From positions 608,833-672,832 of the forward strand of contig NW_003314281.1 in NCBI RefSeq assembly GCF_000143415.4: 64,000 nt of DNA, read 5' to 3'. A program made the translations under genes and the position numbers. Positions within the stretch are counted from its first letter, which is position 1; each line of letters begins with the position of its first letter. Under the pieces are notes generated by a model, which did not search any database, had not been told where the DNA came from, and worked only from the letters and a program-made list of their open reading frames with translations. The stretch comes from Selaginella moellendorffii. Taxonomy: Eukaryota; Plantae; Lycopodiophyta. Positions 28,455 through 52,472 of the stretch are shown one piece after another.

Positions 28455-31400
28455 TCAGCAGTAGTACATGTAGTCCCGGACTTCAGGAAGTACCTCAGGC
28501 AGCCTATACTCCGCGGCCGCAGCGCGAGCAGAAGAAGATCCAGCTCCAGCGGCAACACTGTCGACGTGGAGCCGAGACCGGTAGGCCACCAGGTGAGCGT
28601 AGTACGCCGGAGGTATCACCGAGACCGCCTTGGTACACCGGGCATAAGTGTAGCATAAGCTGTTGACGAGCGTCTGGAGCTGGTCGGCCGTGAAGCCATT
28701 CTGGTCGAGCAGGACGTGGTAGTGCGTCGGCCGGCTGGTTCCCTGGAGACCCCTGTGGCTGCAAAGGTAAAAGTCGAACTCTCGAGGATGGGTGATCTCC
28801 GTGTCCACAACGGTCCCCGGTCTCACGTTGTTGCTCACCACGTTACTGTCCGCCGGGAAGAACCTCGTGTGGTGACGCTTCTGGACGACCACGAAAGTTA
28901 TCTGGGGACAGTAGTCGCCATTCGGCTGGAGGGTAAGGAACGCCCTCCGGATTGCCTGCACTTCGTTGTTCAGGACGTCGGAGAACTGGCCCTCGCTCAC
29001 ACCATCCCGGAAGAAGAGAAGCCTCTCCGGTTTGAGTCTGGTGTGAGTGAAAAACGCCCTCATGAGGTCGACCACCATGTCATGCAGGTGCTCGATCATC
29101 TCCACCCTGCCCCTCTGAGATCTCGCGCGAGCGAGATACTTGACCGCCGATGGCCAGTCCATGCTCGCCACCACCGCGGAGATGGAGGGACTCGTGTCGT
29201 CGCGAGCCATGGGATGAGAGACATCAGCTCCAAAGATGATTGTTGGATTGCCGAGAATCGATGGAACCATGAGTCGCAGATCCTGCGCCAGATCCATGTT
29301 CTGGCCTCCAACTTTGACGTTGATCTTCATCGCGAGGTTGGCCAGGTACTGTGACAAACTGTTGTACTCCTTCATCACATTTTTCTTAAGGCACACTTGC
29401 GTCACGAGCCCGAGCTCCGTCTCGCACAGCTTCTTCAGGTCCCCGTAAATCTGGTGCTTGGCGTCCATGAGACAAACTACCAGCTGAAGACCTTCCCCGG
29501 GCTTGCTTTTGCTGGCGTGATTCCTGACGGCATTCCGGAGTAGCGTATCATACTGCTCCAGCCGACCGCTGGAAGGAGGGATCACGGGAGGATCCATCTG
29601 AACTCCAACCGCCGCGCACCGCGTGATCAACTCACTGATGAAAGCATCCACGTCCTGTCTTGCTAATCTCGCGAAGTTGACGAGAGTCCAGCGGCGGATT
29701 ACTCCCCCTCGAAGAAACCTAGACCGCATCATGTTCCAGCCGCCATCAGATGGCGTGATCCGGTTGCTGCTATACCTCAGACTCGGAGTTGGAAGAACCC
29801 TTGCGTGCAGAGACGTCATCGACTTAGCCACCTGAATTCCAAACTCCGCAGCATAATCATTCCTGGAAGCAAAAAAGACAAGCGTGTCAAGAACAAGAGC
29901 GCAGAACTTCATATGAAAGAAAACTTACCGCTGAAAGTCTTGAACATTGCTCATAAGAGTCTTTATGTTCTGCTCTCGAACAGCAGGAATCTGACACGTG
30001 AACCTCAGCATGTTTGTTGTCTGCCTCTCGTTGAGCTTTCCCTGATATTTCTGACCGGCAGCCAGCTTGCACACTTCCATAGGCAGATAAGTAGTTTTCC
30101 TTCCTTGCAACTCGAGGCAAGGCAACTCGGGATACTGGATCTTATGCTTGTACGTCGTCCAAAAGTAGTCCACAACCTTCACCTCCTGTCCAGAATCAGT
30201 TGTGAACGTCAACGCCTTTGTTGGCCGCAAAGACAGTCCCGAAATCCTGTATCTCCGAGGGATGTTCCTGTGCGTGACTTCGACCTTGAGCCGGTTCAAG
30301 AGATTTTTGGCCTTGGCTCGATCACCGTCCGACAAGCCTCGGCTTGGGTCGAAGTACGGGAGTGACTTCTTGAGGAACTCGAGAACTGGCAATGCCTCGT
30401 AAAATGCTGCTGCAGACAAATCGACGTTCAGCACGAGGCCTTGCATGGTTGGACGAACACTCTGGTAAAATCCTTTCCAGGCCTCAAAACCACCTTCTAG
30501 TGCCAGCCTCCCGAATGACGGATCGAAGAAGTTACGTCCACTGGGAACGTACGACTTCATGGGCCACTCTCTCAAAGCCACGTCCAAAGCTTGCAAGAAC
30601 TCATACGGGGCTTGTAGGACCGCACCTCTGCCTTCGAGGAAGAGGTCCATTTGATACTGGTCCAGCTTCGCGGCAAACTTGATCGTGACTTTGAACTCGC
30701 GGGTCCTGCGCCCTTCTTCCTCTGCCGGCAACGTAACTTTGAAGTCCTTCTGCTCAAACGGAAGTGGCCCCGCCGTGTACAAGCTCTTGCTTCCATCGTA
30801 GACGGGAAGAAGGTTGTTTAGCTCTGAAGCCCGATACTGTGACACGAGCTGCCGCTCCAGAGCACGAGCAATCCCTTTCGAGCCAACAGCCGGATGAATG
30901 GATACGTCGTAGTGAAAGATGGGTCCATCTTTCACCTTCATCTTGAAGTGGTTCACTCTGATGGTAACCTTCTGTCCAACAGTTCCTCGATCAGGCCTTT
31001 TAGGAGGTGCAAGTGCTTTCGAGGAGGTAGGAACATCACCAGTGCTGCTGCTAGGAACGGGAGCACTCGGGCCAGCAGGAGTTTCCTTCACGTCCAAATC
31101 TTTTACTCGAGGAACCAGCGAGTCGGCACTAGCGCTCTGGCCTACAACAAAAGCAAACAAAAGATCACAACTTTGGCATGCCCGAGGGATGAAAATTTAC
31201 GTACCAGATCCTCCAGGGACAGAGCTCTCGATGGTTTGAGGCCTAGGACCAGTCGAAGAAGATGCTCCTCCTACAGCAAGAAATTCAAGGAGTAAAGCTC
31301 CAGAAGAACAAAGAAAGAGATGCGTACCATGTCCTGCCTGGGATCCAGCAGCGCTCTGGTTGTAAGCCACTCCTACAACAAAAGCAAACAAAAGATCACA

Positions 31401-32425: not shown

Positions 32426-35400
32426 TCATTTCTTCTCGCTGGCTAGAGCAGCCGCCACAGTCGCGGACGCGTCCTCGAGAGTTCGCTTCTTCTCCACTTT
32501 GTCGAATGCCTGTATGGTGTCGCCATCTTGCCACTCGTTGAAGCCATCCACGCCAACACCACACTCCAAACCAGCATCAACCTGGAAATCGAAGAAGGAC
32601 CATGATCGAATTGGAAGTAGCGAGCAAAGAGAAACTTCGATACCTCCTTGGCGACGTCTTTTACTCGTCGAAGCGAGCTCAAACTCCCAGTGTGCACGGT
32701 TTTCTTCCCTCGCTTGACGTGAACACCGCAGCCTTTGGTCAGCTTTCCTTCCGTCACCATGCATCCCGCCACTCGTCCACTTCCACTCGTGAAAACCGCT
32801 CGAACCTCCGCTTTTCCAATCGGAACTTCCTCCTGCGATACAAGTGTGAGTGATGGGAGAATTCACGAGAGAGGAAATGGAAAGAACCATGTACCTGGAT
32901 GGGCTTCAAGAGACCCTCCATTGCTTGCCTCATGTCATCTACTAATTCGTATATGACTTTGTACAAACGAATCTCAACGCCTTCGCTGTCAGCCTTGTCC
33001 CTCACCGTCGGCTGCGTGCGTACGTTGAAACCAATCACGATTGCTCCGCTCGCAATCGCCAAATCTATGTCACTGGCTGTTATATCGCCTGTGCCTTGCA
33101 TCAAAAACCGAAGCTGGACAGTGTCCTGCGGCAAAACTTGGAGCGCCTCCCTGATGGCCTCCACAGTTCCCTGAGATCAAACAACACAAGCGTATGAAAC
33201 GAGTGAACGAGCAAGGAAAACAATGCCGGTACCTGAACGTCAACTTTGAGAACAATGTTTAGCTGGTGTGACTCAACACCGGAGTCCTTTCCAGACGCTA
33301 CAGCACTCGCAAGGTTCGCAAGGGTCACCTTTCCTTCGCTAGCTTGAGAGGCTAGACGAGAATCACGCATGCGTTCTGCGTATTCGGCAGCAGCGTCTCT
33401 AGCATCATCAATCGTGTCGCGGATTTCAAATTCGTATCCAGCAACTGGTACACTGCTCAGTCCAATCACCTGAGATAATCGCAGTCAGATGTCGATGCTA
33501 AAAGATCTTAAGCAAGAATCGAAGAAAACCTGCACTGCGGTTGATGGACCAGCCTCATTGACCGACTTCCCTTTTTCGTCAAACAATGCTCGCACCTGAA
33601 AACGAAAAAAATAAGAACGTTGTTCCGGTAGCTATGCTTGATTAGAAGTTTACCTTTCCATAGCTTTCACCACAGAGAACCACGTCTCCTTTGCTTAGTG
33701 TACCATTTTGCACGAGCAACGTAGCAACCGGTCCCCTTGCCTTGTCTAAGCTTGCTTCAATGATTGTGCCACTGGCCTCACGGTGAGGATTGGATCTTAA
33801 GTCTTGCAACTAGCGGGAAAGCAAGAAAACATGAGCTCCAAGCTACAAGTTTTACTGCACAGTACCTCGGCAACAAGCATGACCGTCTCCAGTAACGAAT
33901 CAATGTTCTCTCCTGTAAGAGCACTAACCGAAACCATCTGCTCTTCTCCACCCCACTCTGGTGGAACTACACCCGCTTTTGCAAGCTCTTCCTTGACACG
34001 ATCAACGTTTGCTCCCGGCTTGTCAATCTGCAACGAAAGGAAGAGTTTAGTCACAAGAACGATGATCTCATATACAAACAATACCTTGTTGATAGCTACG
34101 ACAATTGGAACCCTGGCAGCTTTGGCGTGAGCGATTGCTTCCAAAGTCTGTGGACGGGTTCCATCATCTGCTGCTACCACGATAATTGCAATGTCTGTGA
34201 TTCGTGCACCACGAGCTCGCATAGCACTGAAAGCCTGTTGACGAGAACAAGAAAGCCTTTAGCATTTCCAAAGAAGACGTAAAACACAATATGTACCTGA
34301 TGCCCCGGTGTGTCAAGGAAAACACACGTTTGCTCCTCCCCATCGACTGTCACAGGCACTTGATATGCACCAATTGCTTGTGTGATTCCTCCAGCTTCTC
34401 CGGCAGCCACCTGAATCATGAATGCAGAGAACTTCTAACATGAGAAACCAAAAAGGAAAGAAAAGAAAGAAAAAAGAAATACCTTTGTCTTCCTGATGTA
34501 ATCCAGCAACGAAGTCTGTAGCACAAAATAAAATCAAAGTGTCAAAAACAAAAAAGAAGATCGAAATCAAAGTTCTCGTAATTACCTTTCCATGATCAAC
34601 ATGTCCCATGACTGTTACCACTGGTGGACGTCTCTCCAGTGACTCCAAGTCTTCTTCGTCCAGGAACTCTTTCTGCTTCTTGGCCATGTCCTCGACTTTG
34701 ACAGAGCCAGCTTCGATAACTTCCACTTCGTATTCATTGCACACAATTTTCACAGATTCTTCATCCAGCATCTGGTTGATCGTCACTGCTATTCCCTTCA
34801 TGAACAAGACCTTGACAACAGCCGCTTCGTTGATAGCCAGCTTACTCGCCAAGTCTCCCACGGTCATTCCCTGCTTCCCCACCTCCAAAATCTCCACTTT
34901 CACCGGAGCCGAGGCCTTTGCAGCCTCTGCTCGCTCGGCTTTCCTTCTAGCTTTCGAGTACTTCCTGCCTTTGCGTGCCGGACTCACACCTGAAATGCTG
35001 ATACCAATCTCTTCCGCGTCGTCCATGGCATTCTCGTCACGAGCAACGGTTCTGCGCTTAGCTCCATCCATCACTTCCGATCTTTTCCGCTTGTCATCCC
35101 TGGCCTTGTTCGCTAAACCCGGCTTCGATGATGGCGGACCTCCAGCTCCAGTGTCTTTGTCTTTGAGACCTGTCTGCTTCTTCGTTGCCTCGTCACTCTT
35201 TGTCGAAGAAGAGCGACCCGAAGGAGGAGGGGGAGGTGTAGCGCTCGGTTCCACCACCTTCCTGAAAGTATCCACTAATCTCGGTCCCTTGGGCGCCACC
35301 GGCGGTGCCGCTGGCTTTGGAGCAATCATCGGCTTCGTTGACATGAGAGGCTCTTTTCTCAAAACGGGCGGAGGTCGCATCAAAGGTGGCGAGCTGAGAA

Positions 35401-36529
35401 TCGGAGTTCTTGGTGGTGCTGAAAGTCCAGGAGCTCTAGCCAGCGCTGGAGTTTGTGATGACGGAGAAACTCCTGGAGATGGAGCCGGAGCCGGAGCCGG
35501 AGCTTGTGACGACGGAGAAACTCCTGGAGATGGAGCCGGAGCTGGAGTTTGTGGCGACGAAGAAACTCCTGGAGGTGGAGCAGGAGCTGGAGTTTGGGAC
35601 GACGAAGAAACTCTTGGAAATGGAGCCGCAGGAGGAGCTTGCTTCGACGCTGATACATCTGTCTGTGGAGGAGCCTTTGGTAAGTCTTGGCTTACCTTCA
35701 CAGCGGTCGAGCTCTCTGGGGGCTTTGGAAAATTCGTTTGTGGGGGAGTCTTTGGAGCAACGGGCTTGCTCTTCACAGCGCTGCTGTTAGCACCATTTAC
35801 CGGCGTCACGGGATCTCCTTTCTTCCACCTCGTCTGGAATCCACCTTGTTGTTGGAACGACGAAGAAGCACCCATCGTTCCTGGCTGCTGGAAGGATTGC
35901 TGCCTTCCCATCACCGGCCTAGAACTTGGCGAATTCGTGGGAGGAGAATTCGCCAGCCTCTCCGCGCTCTGTAACACTTTGTCCAAGTTTTGCATAGCTC
36001 CACCGCCATGGCCCTGCTGCGATGGCGCGGCAGAAGGAGCATTCTCCCTGGGCCGATAAACTTGCGCAAAGCTACCACTACTTCCACTTCCTGGCCTTCT
36101 CATCTGGTTGCTCGCAGCGCCTCCATTCGCAGGAGGAGGAGGTGGAGGAGGCATCATCACTGGCTTGGGCCGCGAGAGTGGGATCATCGGCTTTGGCGAT
36201 GGCTTGAGCAGCGGCATACTCTCACCATCGCTCGCAGCTCCTGCGCTGGGCTTGGCCGATTTGCCACCGCCATCGTCGTCGGCGGCACTGGCGCCATCGG
36301 CATCCAACACCCGGACGCGCTCCTCGGCAAATGCCATGCATTTGGAATGCCTCCTGGAGCCGCCGCCTTGCCGGAGCCGCGATCTGAGCTGCGCGCCGGG
36401 GCTGGAGAGCCCGAAAATCGCCGAGGTGGATGCAGCCGCGCAGTCGGCATCGCCCCTGGGCCATCTCCAGCAAGAATTGTGAGGGCAGACGACGAGCTGC
36501 CCTCCCAGGGCACCCAATGCGGCGCTCAT
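32426..36529 (-). CDS. FUG1: Plastid translation initiation factor IF-2, multi-exon
   Basis: Transit-like start [10 protein letters not shown], long Pro-rich N-terminus, [66 protein letters not shown]. Confidence 0.93.
35448..35626 (-). repeat. Coding minisatellite in the IF2 N-terminus (4 x ~42-48 nt; [14 protein letters not shown])
   Basis: GAAACTCCTGGAGATGGAGC-type unit repeated four times. Confidence 0.85.
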
Positions 36530-36718
36530 TCTTCCCGCAAATTCATCACAGCTGGAGGAGAGCCTCGCACCTTTGCCGCGTAGGGGTCGCCCCGGAGCAT
36601 CCGGAAGAACCCTAAAACCCGGAGAGAGGATGTCTGTCGCGACGACGCCATAGCGCAATGTGGATACGCATACGTGGCACTAATGGAAGCCACAAACCCT
36701 ATATACCCGATTCGAATA

Positions 36719-36832: not shown

Positions 36833-38170
36833 ATGGGCAGGAGCGTCCGAGAGGATGCGATCCACTGCGGCGCAGTGGAATCGGACAGCTATATCGCGAA
36901 TGCGGTGCTGGGGATGTACGCCAAGTGCGGGAGCATGGGCGAGGCATCCAGGTGCGCCGGCGCGATCTGGTGTCGTGGAATTCTCTCATCGCGGGATTGC
37001 CGAGAATGGGCAATCGTCTCTCGCGTTGGATCTCTTCCAGCGGTGCCTCTGGCTTTCTTCCAGATCGCTTCACTTCCTCGCGGCATTGAAGGCGTGCTGT
37101 GCCTTGGGATCAAAGGAGGAATCCACCGCCGCGATGGGCAAAGCAAGATCTCTGGAGATCGTCATGGCGCTACACCGAGAAGCCTCGCGATTTGGCTGCG
37201 CGGACGACGTCCTCGTCGCCACCAGCCTGATTGACGCCTACGAAAAATCTGGCAGCATGGAAGATGCGCAGAGAGCTTTCGATCGAGTGCCTCACCGCAA
37301 CGTCGTCTCGTGGACTGCTCTCATCGCCGGCCACGCTCCCAATCGAGATGGCGCTGCTGGGCTGCAAATCTTTCAGCGAATGGATCCTTGCTGCACTCCA
37401 AACTCTCACACTTTTGTGGCGGCCTTGGAGCTCTTGCTTGAGCATCGCCGAGAAGGAAGAAGAAGATCATGGGAAGATTATGATCAAGGTGGTGGCTCTA
37501 GAGACTGCTATGGCGATCCATTCTCGAGCAGCTAAACACCACCAAGCGTGCTTGTTCGTGGCCAATGCTATGATCGAAGTCTACTCCAAGTGTGGAAGCA
37601 TGGACGATGCTCGTGGATGCCTTGCCGCGACGCGATCTAATCTCGTGGACGTCTCTCATGTCTGGATACGTCCACAACGGTGAGCCCGAGCTCGCCATAG
37701 CTCTCTTCGAGGACATGAAACAGGCCGGGAAGAAACTCCATGGCGAGATTTGCCGGAGAGGTGGAATCCAATCATCCTTGGCTCTGCTCGTAGCTCTCGT
37801 GGATTTCTACGGTCGATGCGGGAGCATAGGCGATGCCGAGCTCGTACTCTTGCAAGACTCCATCGCCAGTAGAGACATCGCCGTGTAGAACTCTCTCATG
37901 GCTGGATACAGTCGCCATGGAAACGGTTTCTAGAACTTTTCACCGATTGCAAGACGAGGGCCACAAGCCCGATGCTGCGACGTTTGTGGGAATTCTCGCG
38001 GCTTACAGCGGTGCCGGGCTGGTCGAAAGTGCGAAGACGTGTTTCCATGCCATGAAAATCTCGCTCGCCATCGTTGCGGTCCTGCATGACTTCATGAGCT
38101 CCAAGTGTTCTCTGCAATCCATTCCTAAAACCTCCGATCAAACAATTCCATTTCATCAGAACGGTTGAGC
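36833..38170 (+). pseudogene. PLS PPR pseudogene with multiple frameshifts
   Basis: PPR motifs scattered over three frames (LGMYAKCGSM, RDLVSWNSLI, RNVVSWTALI, VYSKCGSMDDAR, DLISWTSLMSGY, DFYGRCGSIGDA, KPDAATFVGIL) with internal stops. Confidence 0.85.
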
Positions 38171-38510
38171 GTGCTGAGCTCAACCGTTATATTTGGGCAT
38201 TTCAAATATAATGTCTTATAATCGATTTGAGCAGATGCCACTCATGGGCATATGCAATCCAAGCAACTGCCATCTCGAAGAACTGAAGCATGTCCTAGCA
38301 TAGTTATGTAAATTCCAAATGAAGACATTCATTTTAAATAAACTGCTGCTTAAAACAATAGCAAAATAAATTTATATAGTTGATTAAAATAAGGCGAATC
38401 AATCATCCCGTCTTTTATCTTATCTACGATGCAAAAAAATGACAATTAAAAAAAAAAGGACATACCTTGTTCAGCCTATAAATTAACTAAAACCTAGCAT
38501 AGCACGTTTT

Positions 38511-38520
38511 CTATAAAAAG
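38511..38520 (+). promoter_or_regulatory. TATA box of the trypsin-like protease gene
   Basis: CTATAAAAAG upstream of a pyrimidine-rich leader and a probable 5'UTR intron (~38667-38875) ending just before ATG 38882. Confidence 0.5.
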
Positions 38521-38706
38521 GGCCTATTTTAGGGCGACGATTTTATAGATTGAAGATTGGCAGCGCTTAGGGTTCAACACCAGCACCGGGGGGGTGTTCT
38601 TTCTTGGATTCTAGTCGATCTCGGTTTCTTGATCTTGCTCCTTGCCTGATTCCTTAGTTGCTTCAGGTACCGCGAGATTTTCTTTGGTCATCTTTGGTAC
38701 ACCTTT

Positions 38707-38850
38707 GGTTGGCAACAAGTGCAGGCCCCAAGGCATCCAAGTGGGTTCTGCAAACCGCGCAGAAACTATTCAAGCCAGCATATTGGTCGGCAACAAGTGG
38801 AAGCGCCAAGGCATCCAAGTGCAAACTGCGCGGAAACTATTCAAGCCAGG
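38707..38850. repeat. Tandem duplication (~75 bp x2) in the putative 5'UTR intron
   Basis: GGCAACAAGTG...CCAAGGCATCCAAGTG...GCAAAC.GCGC.GAAACTATTCAAGCCAG occurs twice. Confidence 0.85.
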
Positions 38851-38881
38851 ATAGCCTTCTCTCATCGATTGTCAGGCAGAA

Positions 38882-40588
38882 ATGAACCTCTGGAGAACAG
38901 CCCGTTGTGGTGGACTCACACTGGACAATGCGGATGTGGATGTGGGCACAGGAAATGATGCTGGGGATGTTGAGGATCTGGATGATGGAGTTTCACAGAC
39001 TAATGATCCAGAAGGCAACACAGTAGCAGCTGCTGTTACTAGCCGTGACTGTCGTGAGTGGTCAATTTCTGATCTTTATCCAGAAAGGCTTATAATCAGC
39101 AAGGATTCTCAATATCCAGGCAAGTTCTCCCGTTTTTATGCATGTGATTGGAAGACAGGTCATATGTACCCTTTTTCTCCTGCTCAAGGAGAGCTCCCAA
39201 AACAAATTCCTTTGAGTCCTGATTGCAGTCCCACTACAAGGATGAAGCAACAAGTATACGTTGGGATTGAAAACATGAAAAGTACACACAGAGTTCTTTC
39301 AATCTTTCAAAATCACATTGGTGAGTGGTTTCATTTTTTATTTTTCTCTATTCTAAATTTGAGGTTCAGGGGATGAGGAAACCACAAACGGCACTGCTTT
39401 TGCAGTTTCACAGCATATGCTTCTAACAGCTGGCCATTTGGTCACTTTTAAAGATGGGAAGAACATGAAGTGGCAATTGAAGGAGGTGCTAGTTTATGCA
39501 GGTAAGTACACCACCACCAGATTGGATACCATAACTTGGACTAAAGTTTTTGAACAGGGGAATTTGTGCCCATTCAAAAAGTTCGTGAATTTGGTTTTCG
39601 CTGCACAGTTCAAGGAAATGCCACCTCTGTTTACAGTACCAGGAAGGAGTGCCCTGAATTTGGATCTGACATAGCATTTCTCAAAGTAAGGTGTGCTTCT
39701 TTTGATTTCAATTTACTAAAACATTTGTTTTGTAGGTGGAGGGAACGACTCTACCATGCTTTCTTTTACCTTCTTCGCCACAAAAGGACTTGCCTCTCAC
39801 GGTATTTGGGTACCCTGATGCGGTTGGCTACTTAAGACGAGCAACACGAGAGTTAAAACAGAATGCTAATCCAGAAAATGGTGGGCTTTGGAGTGTCTAT
39901 TGGCGAGTCCTGTGGGACAATATTCAGGAATGGACGGCACAATACGAGGTACTTAAATCTCATTAATGAAATTTGGTTTTTAACCTGGATTTTATTGGAT
40001 TTATAGGGTGATTTAAAGCGTGCTGAAGAAACAGCTAAGAAATGGCTTCTTGAACAGTTTCAAACCGTTCTGCGAGGAATACCGGATGGGGCTCAATGTG
40101 TTTCTGCTGGATTTGTTGAAGCACTTACATCATGCTTTGTCGGTCATACTTGTCCCACCGTACCAGGTTGGTAGTTCTAGCTACATTACTTTTCTGAAAT
40201 CTCAAATTTATGTTGTTTACAAACAGGTGTTTCCGGGGGTGCCGTTTCACCCATGGAAAGTCCAGGTTATTTCGTAGCAGCTCACGCTGGGGCCTTAGAC
40301 ATCAACCAAAACTGTGGAACGTCCACAGATAATCCAGCTTTCGTGGATCAGTATCTAAAATTTGTGTTGCAAGATCTTCCGACTCCAGAGTGGGCATTGT
40401 ACACAAGGGCAGATTTCAGCATAAGGCCATTTCTCGCTTGGTTACACACTCATAAGGCGATGCTCCCTCCATCTTCTCCCTGGGTGAAGCATCTGCAGCA
40501 GCAGCTGATGGTTGTCCATGCTAGCGAGCAGCAGGTCGAGCGACCATCAAAAAGAAGAAAGTTAGAAGACACTCTGTTCAATAGATAG
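38882..40588 (+). CDS. Trypsin-like (PA clan) serine protease, 477 aa, with C-terminal NLS-like motif; exons 38882-39320, 39370-39501, 39558-39685, 39736-39948, 40007-40166, 40227-40588
   Basis: Five GT-AG introns give a continuous frame (1434 nt); GTAFAV..LLTAGH, SDIAFLK, VFGYP, HTCPTVPGVSGGAV, FVAAHAG; ends RPSKRRK. Confidence 0.8.
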
Positions 40589-42050
40589 GAGGTCTCTCTC
40601 TTATGGAAGTAATGTAAGTCTGCGGGCCAGAGGAGTTGCACAGGTGTGCTTGCCTTGTCTACTGGCTGACGAGACTAGTGGAGAAGGTCAGGAAACCAAG
40701 CGGCATTGCGTGTGGCTGTCAGCCTGCGCTGAAGCGGCTGTGACAGTCTTGGGAATGAGGATTTTACGGCTGAGCAGATTCAGCTAGCTGCGATCCCGAA
40801 AGTTATGATTGTTGCATTATCAGTCCACCAGGATGTTCTTGCATGCCAGAACCACATTGGAGACGGCATTGGATTGCATGTCATTGTTCTTATGATGTCA
40901 TTGGGTCTGTATTGGTTCCGGGGAGAATCCAGCTGCTGCGAAATCTTCCGCCCAGCAGGATGAGTCTGCGAAATTATCAAGGTTAGAAATTGGGAAACGA
41001 AAGCACAATATTTCGCTCAAAGAATCTACAATGATAATTGCTAAAATTTATTAAATATATGAATCATGGAAATTAGATGTTAGGAGATAAACTTTCATAG
41101 ACATGAATATTAGCATCAGCCTCAGTGAGAATGAGAGGTTTATTTGATATTCACTTGGGAATCATCTTTTTTCTGATTTCTTTTGATGGAAAAGTTTCTT
41201 TTTGCTCAATTTCATATAGTAAGAAGATGAATAATCAAGTATCAATGCTACTTCTTTGCTCCAGTTTGGTATTTTTTAATTTTATTTTCTTTATTTATTA
41301 TTGATAGAATAAATATCTCTTATATAATTTTTCATATTTTATATTTGTAGGTATCTTGATTCTTTGTTCATGACACACTTGCACACAATCAATGAATTTT
41401 AGAGCATGCTATTAAAACATATGTTTGAATACCAATCCTTTGATTTGTACTTTCTTTTTTATAATTCAATTGTTTAGTAATTTAACTTGGGTTTTAACAA
41501 CTCTCTACAATCATTTTTTTTCTGGAATTATTATAATTGCAGTGTTATACTCTTTTGATCAATCTACACTACTTGGTTAAGGATTTCAAATATACACTGA
41601 TTGGCAAACAATATCAAATGGTTTTTAGAGTTAACAATACATGAACATTAAATAACCAATTTGAAACATTTAATAAACTTTATAAATTTACTTTCAACAC
41701 ATTTATTTTCAGCACAAGTTTAGGTGAGCAAAACATCATTATTTACTTATTTCAACATTAGGAACTCTAAAGAATGTTTCAATAAATTATTCTAGCACCT
41801 ACCTTGGGTGAGTGAGGAAAATATCCCATTTACTACATTTTTACTTTATGTCATCTTTTACCAGCTAATTAAAAAAAATTAAAACCTTTTTCAAGTATGT
41901 AAAAAATGTCAACACGTAGAATTCAAATAAAGAATATCAAAAAAGGGAAACTGAATACCCTAAAACTAATTTCACTATTTAAATTAGCTGCTTCGTTTAG
42001 GGCTCCTGGGAGGGATTTTTGCGAGGCTCCGACTTCTCCCAAGAAAGAAG

Positions 42051-43510
42051 ATGTCCTTCGCCAAGACCGTGACGAGCTCGGACATGGCTGCCATGGTACT
42101 GCCTTCGTCTTCCTCTTCGCACCCCACATTGTATGAAATCTCTGTTTTGTTTGCTGTTTGTTTTGTTTCCAGGCGATCCCCGGGCCAGTCTATGAGAGGC
42201 ACCGCAACGAAGCTTTCGGCGGCACCGTGGCTCTGGCGCATGGCGGCAGGGACTGGCAAGTCGACGCAAGCTCCGGATCCTTCACCACGGGCTGGAAGGA
42301 GTTTTGGCTCGGGAATGCGCTCAACGAGGGCGACTGCCTTGTCTTCCGTCATCAATCGGCCGGGCGCTTCGCCCTGGAGATCTTCGGCAGCGATGGATCG
42401 GCCAAGGAAGGAGGCGTGGGAGCTCCCGCCTATAAGAGCGCTTCCTCTTCCTCGGCGCTCAAGCGATCCAGAGACGATTTGCCAGCGGCGATGGAAGTGG
42501 TCGTCAAGGATTGCCTGGTTCATCTGGAGGACGGCTCCAGCTTGAAGTTCGTCGTCACCAAGATCCCGCCAGAGGATCCAGCAGGGGAGCCTTTCACTCC
42601 TCTAGTCTCTGCCGCCAAAGCTAGCGATGCTCTTCCGCGATCTTCCAGGATGACGAGGTCCTCCCAGAAGAGCGTTCCAGCAGCGAAAGCACCATCTCCA
42701 GATGCCAAAGATGACTCGCCTGCCCCAAAGAAGGCCAAGATCGATTCTCCAAAGAGGACGAGGAAGACGAGGAAGCAAGAGGAAGTCTCCAAGATGGAGT
42801 CATCCAGCGAGAAGAACAAGGAGCCCACCGCCAAGAGCAGTGGAAAGAAGAAGAAGAAGAATCAGGATGTTCCTTGTGACTCTCCGGCGCTCCTTCGAGC
42901 CGAGGCGTTCAAGGCTACCATTCCAAGCACCAATCCAAGCACCGCCATCGTGATGAAGAAGAGTTGCTTACATCCATGTTATTACTTGGTAAGAGATCTT
43001 TGGCTTGTTCTTACCATTTTGTATGTGATCCTGATCTCTCCTTTCTCTCTCTCTCTCTTCGCACAGACCATTCCAAAGGATTTTGCGGAGAAGCTCCCGC
43101 ACGAGAACAAGATGCTGACTGTGGAGAGCAACGCGGTGAAAGAGCCGTGGGATGTGAAGTGGCTCGCGGCAAACCGAGCTTTCAGTGGCGGCTGGAACAA
43201 AGTCGCGCAGTTCTACAACCTGGAGCTCGACGATGCGTGCGTCCTGGAGGTGCTCAACAAAAGTGGGGTGAGGATCAGCGTTTTCAAGGCGGATGGAAGC
43301 TCAAGCGTGGCGGCGAATCAATCGGCTCCAGCGATTGCCAATGGAGAGATTGGTGGTGAAGTAGCAGAGGCAGGATTTGCGACTGTTGATGAAGGCGATG
43401 CCATCGCTGCAATGGAGAAGCTTTGCGGGGATGGCGGTGTGAAGGCGAAAGATGGTGGCGGTGAAAACGGAGATGGTGGTGACAACGAGAATGCAGGACA
43501 GGTGATTTAG
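42051..43510 (+). CDS. B3-domain (REM/VRN1-like) DNA-binding protein with two B3 domains; introns ~42096-42172 and ~42989-43066
   Basis: FTTGWKEFWLGNALNEGDCLVF..FALEIF and IPKDFAE..W.V..FSGGWNKVAQFYNLELDDACVLE..ISVFK, with a Lys-rich linker. Confidence 0.85.
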
Positions 43511-52400: not shown

Positions 52401-52472
52401 GCCTCTATAGCTCAGTGGTAGAGCGTCAGTCTTGTAAACTGAAGGCCCAGAGTTCGATACTCTGTGGAGGCA
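52401..52472 (+). tRNA. trnT-UGU: tRNA-Thr(UGU)
   Basis: GCCTCTA/TGGAGGC acceptor stem, GCTC-AGTGGTA-GAGC D-arm, TCAGT-CTTGTAA-ACTGA anticodon arm, CAGAG-TTCGATA-CTCTG T-arm, T6 terminator at ~52493. Confidence 0.95.

What the first reader, a model, noticed from the sequence alone, without database searches (positions are those of the whole stretch)
38882..40588. Hidden six-exon trypsin-like serine protease with an NLS-like tail in an AT-rich island
Seen: six exons join into 477 aa with a His-Asp-Ser triad in chymotrypsin order (LTAGH, SDIAFL, GVSGGA), an acidic N-terminus, an insert between VFGYP and the Ser motif, no signal peptide, no PDZ domain and C-terminal RPSKRRK. Codons look more AT-ending than in neighbouring genes and both flanks are AT-rich. 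Known: typical plant PA-clan proteases are Deg/HtrA or NAL1-like, and this resembles neither. Inference: an uncharacterised nuclear protease, conceptually like FAM111 or microbial effector-associated trypsins, perhaps horizontally acquired or carried by a mobile element.
Basis: partly seen in the sequence, partly recalled or inferred. Interest (0 to 1): 0.78.

Follow-up and report, generated by a model that had tools for sequence, protein, structure and literature searches.

The report
Spikemoss nuclear-tagged trypsin-fold protease gene
This is a real, expressed spikemoss (Selaginella moellendorffii) gene for an unstudied trypsin-fold serine protease with a nuclear-import-like tail; detectable relatives are only in ferns, it is already in RefSeq as an uncharacterised protein, and nothing shows it sits on a mobile element.

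Summary
Six GT..AG exons (38882-40588, +) give 477 aa with His169, Asp228 and Ser360 in chymotrypsin order and a C-terminal RPSKRRK.

- **Not hidden.** The product equals RefSeq XP_024533586.1 (LOC9637257, Selaginella moellendorffii) residue for residue.
- **Expressed.** RNA data bridge four of the five introns and show a + strand transcript of about 38578-40773.
- **Allelic and constrained.** The other haplotype carries a syntenic copy (AGO-IF2-gene-B3), 94% identical, with dN/dS 0.26.
- **Family.** Pfam Trypsin_2 scores above its cut-off (32.2 against 27.6 bits). There is no PDZ domain and no match to NAL1 chains.
- **Distribution.** Exon 6 scored against 1.84 billion representative proteins found 12 proteins, one of them spurious. 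The named ones are Selaginella and the fern Adiantum.
- **Family-wide features.** The catalytic triad, a helical insert between the two barrels and a conserved C-terminal extension are shared. A basic tail recurs in two of the four fern-side full-length relatives.
- **Transfer or mobile element.** Not supported in Selaginella: five host-type introns, no terminal repeats, and no bacterial, archaeal, viral or metagenomic relatives.
- **Unexplained.** GC3 is 0.38 against 0.52-0.73 in neighbours. Divergence between haplotypes is raised. The fern copies look intronless.

Both structure predictions failed (pLDDT 38 and 43.5), so triad geometry is untested.

The parts
38578..38881 (+). 5' UTR. It contains no upstream ATG. 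It holds two direct repeats of about 75 nt (38705-38782 and 38783-38853).
   Evidence: RNA contig X1 runs 38578-39319 without a break. No ATG lies in 38578-38881. Repeats D1 and D2.
38882..39320 (+). Exon 1 (aa 1-146). Acidic, variable N-terminus, then a segment conserved across the family (KFSR...G...P...SP...ST.R).
   Evidence: Intron 1 junction 39320/39370 seen in RNA contigs X1 and X5.
39370..39501 (+). Exon 2. His motif GTAFAVS..LLTAGH; the His169 codon is 39435-39437.
   Evidence: His is invariant in A3. It aligns to the catalytic-His motif of MarP/Rv3671c. Intron 2 junction seen in X1, X5 and one raw read.
39558..39685 (+). Exon 3. Asp motif GSDIAFLK; the Asp228 codon is 39668-39670.
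   Evidence: Intron 3 junction seen in 5 + 2 stranded raw reads and in both contig sets.
39736..39948 (+). Exon 4. Family motif FLLPxS, then VFGYP, then the start of the helical insert.
   Evidence: The downstream junction (intron 4, 39949-40006) was not bridged by RNA. It is required for the frame, because retention gives a stop after five codons.
39823..40084 (+). Helical insert (aa 263-330, spanning intron 4). It lies between the GYP strand and the first strand of the second barrel.
   Evidence: Helices at aa 262-326 in both AF2 models, and the only part with pLDDT 70-89. The segment varies in length across the family.
40007..40166 (+). Exon 5. End of the insert and the first strands of the C-terminal barrel.
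   Evidence: Intron 5 junction seen in raw reads and contigs.
40227..40588 (+). Exon 6.
- Ser motif G-V-S-G-G; the Ser360 codon is 40232-40234.
- G-x-H-x-G motif (His379).
- Conserved C-terminal extension (aa 396-445, 40340-40489).
- Basic tail RPSKRRK (40541-40561).
- Stop codon at 40586-40588.
   Evidence: The Ser region aligns to the glutamyl endopeptidase G-N-S-G-S and IGIHYGG motifs. RNA contig X1 is unbroken over 40224-40773.
40589..40773 (+). 3' UTR.
   Evidence: RNA contig X1 record 3.

Best explanation
**What it is.** This is the single-copy (one per haplotype) Selaginella moellendorffii gene LOC9637257. It encodes a soluble chymotrypsin-fold (PA clan, Pfam Trypsin_2) serine endopeptidase. 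The catalytic triad is His169-Asp228-Ser360.

**Architecture.** It belongs to a small, undescribed subfamily seen so far only in a lycophyte and in ferns. The subfamily has four distinguishing modules:
- a conserved N-terminal segment of about 80 aa behind a variable acidic head;
- a helical insert of about 65 aa in the linker between the two barrels;
- a conserved C-terminal extension of about 50 aa (LPxLPxP..W..PFLxWL..H..SPW);
- in several members, a short basic tail (KRRK here) that fits a classical monopartite nuclear import signal.

**How it most likely works (inferred).**
- The protein is imported into the nucleus and cuts a limited set of substrates.
- The N-terminal segment or the helical insert gates or oligomerises the enzyme, as extra modules do in NAL1 and HtrA.
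- The His in G-x-H-x-G(G/A) aligns with the S1-pocket His of glutamyl endopeptidases. This suggests a preference for Glu or Gln at P1.

**Shown:** gene structure, transcription, constraint, family membership, triad conservation and restricted distribution.

**Inferred:** catalytic activity, nuclear location, P1 preference and the regulatory role of the extra modules.
For: - **Model and database identity:**
- **Transcription:** four of five junctions are seen, and all stranded reads have the first mate on the - strand, so the RNA is + strand. The ATG at 38882 is the first in the transcript.
- **Allele:** the other haplotype holds a syntenic copy.
- **Constraint:** dN/dS is 0.26 overall and 0.16 in the protease core.
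- **Family membership:** Trypsin_2 scores 32.2 bits against a cut-off of 27.6 for P0013. It also passes in P0003 (32.3) and P0006 (39.8).
- **Triad:** His, Asp and Ser are invariant in six full-length family members.
- **Motif alignments:** the His and Asp motifs align with MarP. The Ser and G-x-H-x-G-G motifs align with glutamyl endopeptidase, E 0.004.
- **Fold, weakly:** all 50 top Foldseek rows for the low-confidence model are PA proteases, best E 0.013.
- **Basic tails in relatives:** KKKRPR in P0016, P0007 and P0015; SKRLKS in P0006.
- **Distribution:** only 12 hits among 1.84 billion representatives. One (P0008) is spurious. All the named ones are Selaginella or Adiantum.
Against: - There is no usable 3D model. 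Mean pLDDT was 38 and 43.5, so triad geometry is unverified.
- The basic tail is missing in P0003 and P0002, and no localisation data exist.
- P0003 has Gln in place of the S1 His.
- Expression is low: 20 and 8 reads in about 12% of two 10.8-gigabase RNA runs.
- Intron 4 has no direct RNA support.
- The distribution rests on a single-exon phmmer query (119 aa) and on representatives at 50% identity. Distant relatives elsewhere, and further fern species, could have been missed.
Confidence: 0.6

Rival explanations
1. Foreign or mobile origin. The gene entered the lycophyte and fern lineages by horizontal transfer, or on a transposon, retroelement or virus (for example a viral 3C-like or sobemo-like protease), and was later domesticated.
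For: - GC3 is 0.38 against 0.52-0.73 in ten neighbouring ORFs. It is close to the 0.40-0.44 of the homologue transcripts L001 and L003.
- The distribution is patchy: Selaginella plus Adiantum only.
- Adiantum copies are several and look intronless.
- One inverted fern pair lies among integrase (rve) genes.
- There are weak, sub-significant similarities to viral 3C-like and sobemovirus-type proteases, E 0.08-2.6. Atlas clusters carrying Peptidase_S39 also appear.
Against: - In Selaginella the gene is syntenic in both haplotypes among ordinary plant genes.
- It has five introns of typical host size.
- It has its own UTRs and no convincing terminal repeats.
- Only one locus per haplotype is known.
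- Among named hits in 1.84 billion representatives, none is non-plant.
- Pattern scans of viral contigs (twice), bacterial and archaeal genomes, and metagenomes found no relative.
- About 28% identity between the Selaginella and fern proteins fits old vertical divergence.
- Integrase genes are everywhere in fern genomes.
Confidence: 0.12
2. An active protease that is not nuclear. The basic tail is incidental, and the enzyme acts in the cytosol or elsewhere.
For: The tail is absent from P0003 and P0002. The older JGI gene model P0014 does not include it. No localisation data exist.
Against: The RNA contig is unbroken across 40224-40773, so the stop at 40586-40588 and the KRRK tail belong to the expressed form. 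Basic tails recur at the same place in three or four divergent relatives. There is no signal or transit peptide.
Confidence: 0.25
3. A decaying or non-catalytic gene: a pseudoprotease, or a transcribed relic.
For: Expression is low. Haplotype divergence is higher than in the flanks. Exon and intron nucleotide divergence are equal at 4%.
Against: The frame is intact in both haplotypes. dN/dS is 0.26 overall and 0.16 in the core. The triad and its motif contexts are invariant across about 28%-identical relatives.
Confidence: 0.05

Closest known systems
Pfam Trypsin_2 (PF13365) proteases of the PA clan, e.g. M. tuberculosis MarP (Rv3671c) and HtrA/Deg protease domains
   Same: The protein scores above the Pfam gathering cut-off. 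The G-T-x-F..S....T..H, D-V/I-A and G-x-S-G-G motifs align. The top Foldseek rows are HtrA1/3, DegS, Deg1 and Rv3671c.
   Different: It has no PDZ domain, no membrane anchor and no signal peptide. The His-Asp spacing is longer, at 59 aa. It adds a helical insert of about 65 aa before the second barrel, a conserved N-terminal segment and a C-terminal extension with a basic tail.
Glutamyl endopeptidases of family S1B (Bacillus and Staphylococcus V8 type)
   Same: This is the best solved-structure match by sequence: E 0.004 over the Ser motif, the G-x-H-x-G-G motif and the last strand and helix. That alignment is the basis of the Glu/Gln P1 guess.
   Different: The match covers only about 70 aa. 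Those enzymes are small secreted bacterial proteins with propeptides. This one is intracellular, twice as long, and from a plant.
Rice NAL1 (NARROW LEAF 1) trypsin-like protease
   Same: Both are plant intracellular trypsin-fold proteases with extra N-terminal domains. Both have a long His-Asp spacing: H234, D291, S385 in NAL1 (PMC12012508). NAL1 acts on a transcription factor, FZP (PMC12012508).
   Different: No NAL1 chain appears among PDB sequence hits up to E 10, nor in the structure searches. NAL1 is conserved in seed plants; this family is not detectable there.
Vertebrate FAM111A/B
   Same: Both are nuclear trypsin-like proteases of the Trypsin_2 type. A FAM111A cluster is the second-nearest Atlas cluster by language-model features for P0013 (0.96, 172 shared features).
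   Different: The lead is not reproduced with the fern relative P0016. No sequence-level match was seen. FAM111's N-terminal PCNA-binding and UBL modules have no counterpart by Pfam. I could not fetch a FAM111 sequence for a direct comparison.

Membership tests
PA clan / Pfam Trypsin_2 (PF13365) | Profile score above the curated gathering cut-off. | tested here: met
   P0013 scores 32.2 bits against 27.6, E 2.2e-7, in two stretches. P0003 scores 32.3 and P0006 39.8. The allele P0001 falls just below, at 25.5.
PA clan / Pfam Trypsin_2 (PF13365) | His, Asp and Ser in that order, each in its canonical motif context. | tested here: met
   His169, Asp228 and Ser360 are invariant in six family members. 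The motifs align to the catalytic motifs of MarP and of glutamyl endopeptidase.
PA clan / Pfam Trypsin_2 (PF13365) | Double beta-barrel fold with the triad in the cleft. | tested here: inconclusive
   AF2 mean pLDDT was 38 and 43.5. The Foldseek top 50 are all PA proteases, but E is at least 0.013 and TM about 0.3. VIA-align gives Z below 5. Model coordinates cannot be read, so triad distances could not be measured.
Deg/HtrA (S1C) | One or more C-terminal PDZ domains. | tested here: not met
   Pfam finds no PDZ domain at E up to 10. The C-terminus is instead a family-specific helical extension.
NAL1-like plant proteases | Detectable sequence similarity to NAL1, whose solved chains 8PME, 8PMM and 8PMG are named in PMC12012508. 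| tested here: not met
   No NAL1 chain appears among 33 and 30 PDB hits up to E 10 with the family profiles A1 and A4. None appears in the Foldseek or VIA lists either.
FAM111 | Specific similarity of the protease domain, plus N-terminal PCNA-interacting and UBL modules. | tested here: inconclusive
   The Atlas feature hit ranks second for P0013 but is absent for P0016. Pfam finds no extra domains. No FAM111 sequence was available for direct alignment.
Viral 3C-like / sobemovirus-type (S39) proteases | Significant profile similarity to those families. | tested here: not met
   Only sub-significant hits: E 0.08-2.6 in PDB, and Peptidase_C3 at E 0.25 in P0002. Viral contigs hold no relatives.
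Transposon- or Helitron-borne gene | Terminal repeats or element ends, multiple copies, and presence/absence between haplotypes. | tested here: not met
   The only inverted repeats are low-complexity AT-rich ones. There is one locus per haplotype. The gene is present and syntenic in both haplotypes. Helitron ends were not searched for specifically.

The most novel reading that the evidence does not exclude
The family is a domesticated protease of foreign origin (viral or retroelement), or at least non-canonical, shared by lycophytes and ferns. It now serves as a nuclear, Glu/Gln-directed protease in a fast-evolving role such as defence. This would be a functional analogue of vertebrate FAM111. 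It would account for the raised allelic divergence, the odd codon usage, and the intronless multi-copy state in ferns.
Probability: 0.1. Interest if true: 0.7.

Novelty: new variant of a known kind. Interest (0 to 1): 0.4.

Why it matters
Plant intracellular trypsin-fold proteases are few, and one of them, NAL1, turned out to control yield traits by cutting nuclear regulators. This gene defines another such family, undescribed in the papers I could search. It has its own add-on modules and a probable nuclear address, and it is confined, as far as can be seen, to seed-free vascular plants.

It is a tractable target. The gene is small, single-copy and expressed. Testing it would show what a nuclear protease does in lycophytes and ferns, and why seed plants lack it. 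The compositional oddity and the high allelic divergence also make it a small test case for lineage-restricted gene origin. The practical weight is modest until a substrate or a phenotype is known.

Tried and rejected
- **Exon-by-exon Pfam scan:** nothing, because the pieces are too short.
- **Exon 6 against PDB:** only chance hits.
- **Word-index protein searches** with P0001, A1 and A2: they returned almost only the queries, plus one new transcript protein, P0016. They are therefore uninformative about distribution.
- **AF2:** run twice, on the whole protein with 7 sequences and on aa 60-460 with 13 sequences. Both gave low confidence. The Foldseek and VIA results carry little weight for that reason.
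- **hhalign of the family profile against E. coli DegS:** only the Ser motif aligned, probability 1.5%.
- **NCBIfam:** nothing.
- **PADLOC:** only generic trypsin-domain similarity to RT-protease fusions.
- **The search for related loci with A3 on bacterial and archaeal genomes:** The repeat with A2 found nothing.
- **Fern genomic DNA:** could not be fetched because the files are too large. Intron positions could therefore not be compared.
- **Literature:** searches for the locus tags, accessions and run ids found nothing.
- **Rejected readings:** Deg/HtrA, NAL1-like, transposon cargo and pseudogene, for the reasons given in the membership table and the rival explanations.

Full report
**Observation.** Reading 38400-41100 and splicing in a local script gives six exons on the + strand: 38882-39320, 39370-39501, 39558-39685, 39736-39948, 40007-40166 and 40227-40588. 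Every intron is GT..AG and 49-60 nt long. The CDS is 1434 nt (477 aa) with one terminal stop. The catalytic codons are His169 at 39435-39437, Asp228 at 39668-39670 and Ser360 at 40232-40234. The N-terminus is acidic, with 12 D/E against 1 K/R in residues 12-56.

**How the spliced model was handled.** I did not send the joined protein to any search or fold tool as typed letters. The joined form was built only inside local scripts, for three purposes: counting, one local BLASTP against P0001, and an identity check. The exon-6 search returned database proteins. One of these, P0013, is identical to the model over all 477 residues. From then on it served as the full-length reference.

**Identity.**
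- Cluster look-up shows that P0013 is RefSeq XP_024533586.1, 'uncharacterized protein LOC9637257 [Selaginella moellendorffii]'.
- An older JGI model on the same scaffold (P0014, SELMODRAFT_413241, 541 aa) differs only at the 3' end.
- P0001 (SELMODRAFT_426786, 481 aa, UniProt 'Peptidase S1 domain-containing protein') is 94% identical.

So the gene is not hidden. It is annotated but unnamed. I found no paper that mentions any of its identifiers.

**Transcription.**
- Two stranded RNA-seq runs and two sets of RNA contigs from other studies were laid on 38400-41100.
- They show a transcript from about 38578 to 40773.
- All read pairs have the first mate on the - strand, so the RNA is + strand.
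- Junctions for introns 1, 2, 3 and 5 lie exactly at the modelled GT..AG sites.
- Intron 4 (39949-40006) was not bridged at this depth. Retention would give a stop after five codons and would put the Ser exon out of frame, and both database models use the junction.
- The contig over 40224-40773 is unbroken. This supports the stop at 40586-40588 and the KRRK tail, against the JGI 3' end.
- There is no ATG in the 5' UTR.
- Expression is low.

**Context.** The neighbours are ordinary plant genes:
- Argonaute, 28455-31160 (-);
- IF2, 34313-36658 (-);
- a PPR-like ORF, 36855-37535 (+);
- a B3-domain gene, 42158-43510 (+).

The P0001 locus on scaffold GL377651.1 has the same order, AGO-IF2-gene-B3. 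It is therefore the allelic copy on the second assembled haplotype. No convincing terminal inverted repeats flank the gene. AT-poor-in-GC stretches like the one at 41000-42000 make up about a tenth of the window.

**Constraint.** Between the haplotypes dN/dS is 0.26. By region it is 0.16 in the protease core, 0.30 in the N-terminal third and 0.55 in the short C-terminal part, the last resting on very few changes. The gene is therefore under purifying selection. It is nevertheless the most diverged segment of a 22-kb haplotype comparison: 94.5% identity, and 81% in the 5' UTR, against 96.5-97.6% in the flanks.

**Family.**
- P0013 passes the Pfam Trypsin_2 cut-off, at 32.2 against 27.6 bits. 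So do two relatives.
- There is no PDZ domain or any other Pfam domain.
- Family profiles against PDB sequences give only weak hits, but they are informative.
  - The N-terminal barrel aligns its G-T-x-F..S....T..H and D-V-A motifs with M. tuberculosis MarP, E 0.03.
  - The C-terminal barrel aligns G-S-S-G-G and G-x-H-x-G-G with Bacillus-type glutamyl endopeptidase, E 0.004.
- No NAL1 chain appears, although NAL1 structures are deposited (PMC12012508).

**Distribution.**
- Exon 6 (119 aa, the best-conserved part) was scored by phmmer against 1.84 billion representatives. It gave 12 hits at E <= 0.001.
- One hit (P0008) is a spurious repeat protein.
- The named hits are S. moellendorffii, Adiantum capillus-veneris and A. 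nelumboides.
- Three come from unnamed assemblies.
- No seed plant, bryophyte, alga, fungus, bacterium or virus was hit.
- Pattern scans of viral contigs, bacterial and archaeal genomes, and metagenomes found no relative.
- The word-index searches were nearly blind here.

**Conserved anatomy (alignment A3).** The following are invariant or shared across proteins only about 28% identical:
- the triad;
- an N-terminal K-F-S-R segment;
- F-L-L-P-x-S after the Asp;
- G-Y/F-P;
- a helical insert of variable length;
- G-x-S-G-G, then G-x-H-x-G;
- A-T-S-T-D-x-P-x-F-V;
- an extension, L-P-x-L-P-x-P...W...P-F-L-x-W-L..H...S-P-W.

A basic tail occurs in Selaginella (KRRK), in P0016, P0007 and P0015 (KKKRPR), and in P0006 (SKRLKS). 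It is absent from P0003 and P0002.

**Structure.** Two AF2 runs failed, with mean pLDDT 38 and 43.5. Only the insert helices and some C-terminal helices are confident. Foldseek on the second model lists PA proteases only (HtrA1/3, DegS, Deg1, Rv3671c), with E at least 0.013. VIA-align gives Z below 5, mixing PA proteases with helical noise. The fold assignment therefore rests on sequence profiles.

**Mechanism.** I take this to be an active intracellular serine endopeptidase. It is probably carried into the nucleus by the KRRK tail, which fits the K-K/R-x-K/R consensus (my own knowledge). The His aligned with the S1-pocket His of Glu-specific proteases suggests a Glu/Gln P1 preference. That is an inference from established knowledge of S1B and 3C-type enzymes. 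The extra modules probably gate or assemble the enzyme. None of this has been tested.

**Foreign or mobile origin.**
- For: GC3 is 0.38 against 0.52-0.73 in neighbours, and similar to the homologue transcripts. The distribution is patchy. The fern copies are intronless-looking and multi-copy, and one pair sits among integrase genes.
- Against: synteny in both haplotypes, five host-type introns, one locus per haplotype, and no detectable donor.

I rate it at about 0.12. The FAM111 likeness is a language-model lead for P0013 that the fern relative does not reproduce.

**Verdict.** The gene is an annotated but unstudied member of a small, lineage-restricted variant of Trypsin_2 proteases. Interest is moderate.

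Noticed in passing
window 36855-37535 (+) and 37108-37581: A PPR-repeat ORF (Pfam PPR, E 1.5e-9) lies between IF2 and the protease gene. It is not a called gene in the other haplotype, and 37108-37581 has no counterpart there. This looks like a haplotype-specific indel in a PPR gene or fragment.
   Followed up: partly
window 38472-40658 against L002:9685-11799: The protease gene is the most diverged stretch between the two haplotypes: 94.5% identity, and 81% in the 5' UTR, against 96.5-97.6% in the flanks. dS is 0.19 in exon 1.
   Followed up: partly
window 38705-38853: Two direct repeats of about 75 nt (90% identical) lie inside the 5' UTR of the protease transcript.
   Followed up: no
window 40659-41121: The end of the 3' UTR and the sequence downstream have no counterpart in the other haplotype locus L002.
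   Followed up: no
window 40540-40600 (model P0014): The old JGI model SELMODRAFT_413241 (541 aa) drops the stop codon and the KRRK tail through a 3' end that the RNA contig does not show.
   Followed up: yes
Adiantum loci of P0003, P0007 and P0015 (no DNA held): The fern homologues look intronless. The P0003 gene span equals its CDS, and the P0007 span of 1425 nt matches the 1422-nt ORF of transcript P0016. P0007 and P0015 form a tail-to-tail pair among rve integrase genes. The annotated P0007 and P0015 models lack the Asp region that transcript P0016 has.
   Followed up: partly
window 52401-52472 (+): A tRNA-Thr (TGT) gene.
   Followed up: no
other pieces of this genome (notes s1-420525, s1-341553): The scan holds untested notes on clusters of other trypsin-fold proteases and pseudoproteases elsewhere in this genome. 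Exon 6 of this gene did not hit any other Selaginella cluster, so they are probably different families.
   Followed up: no
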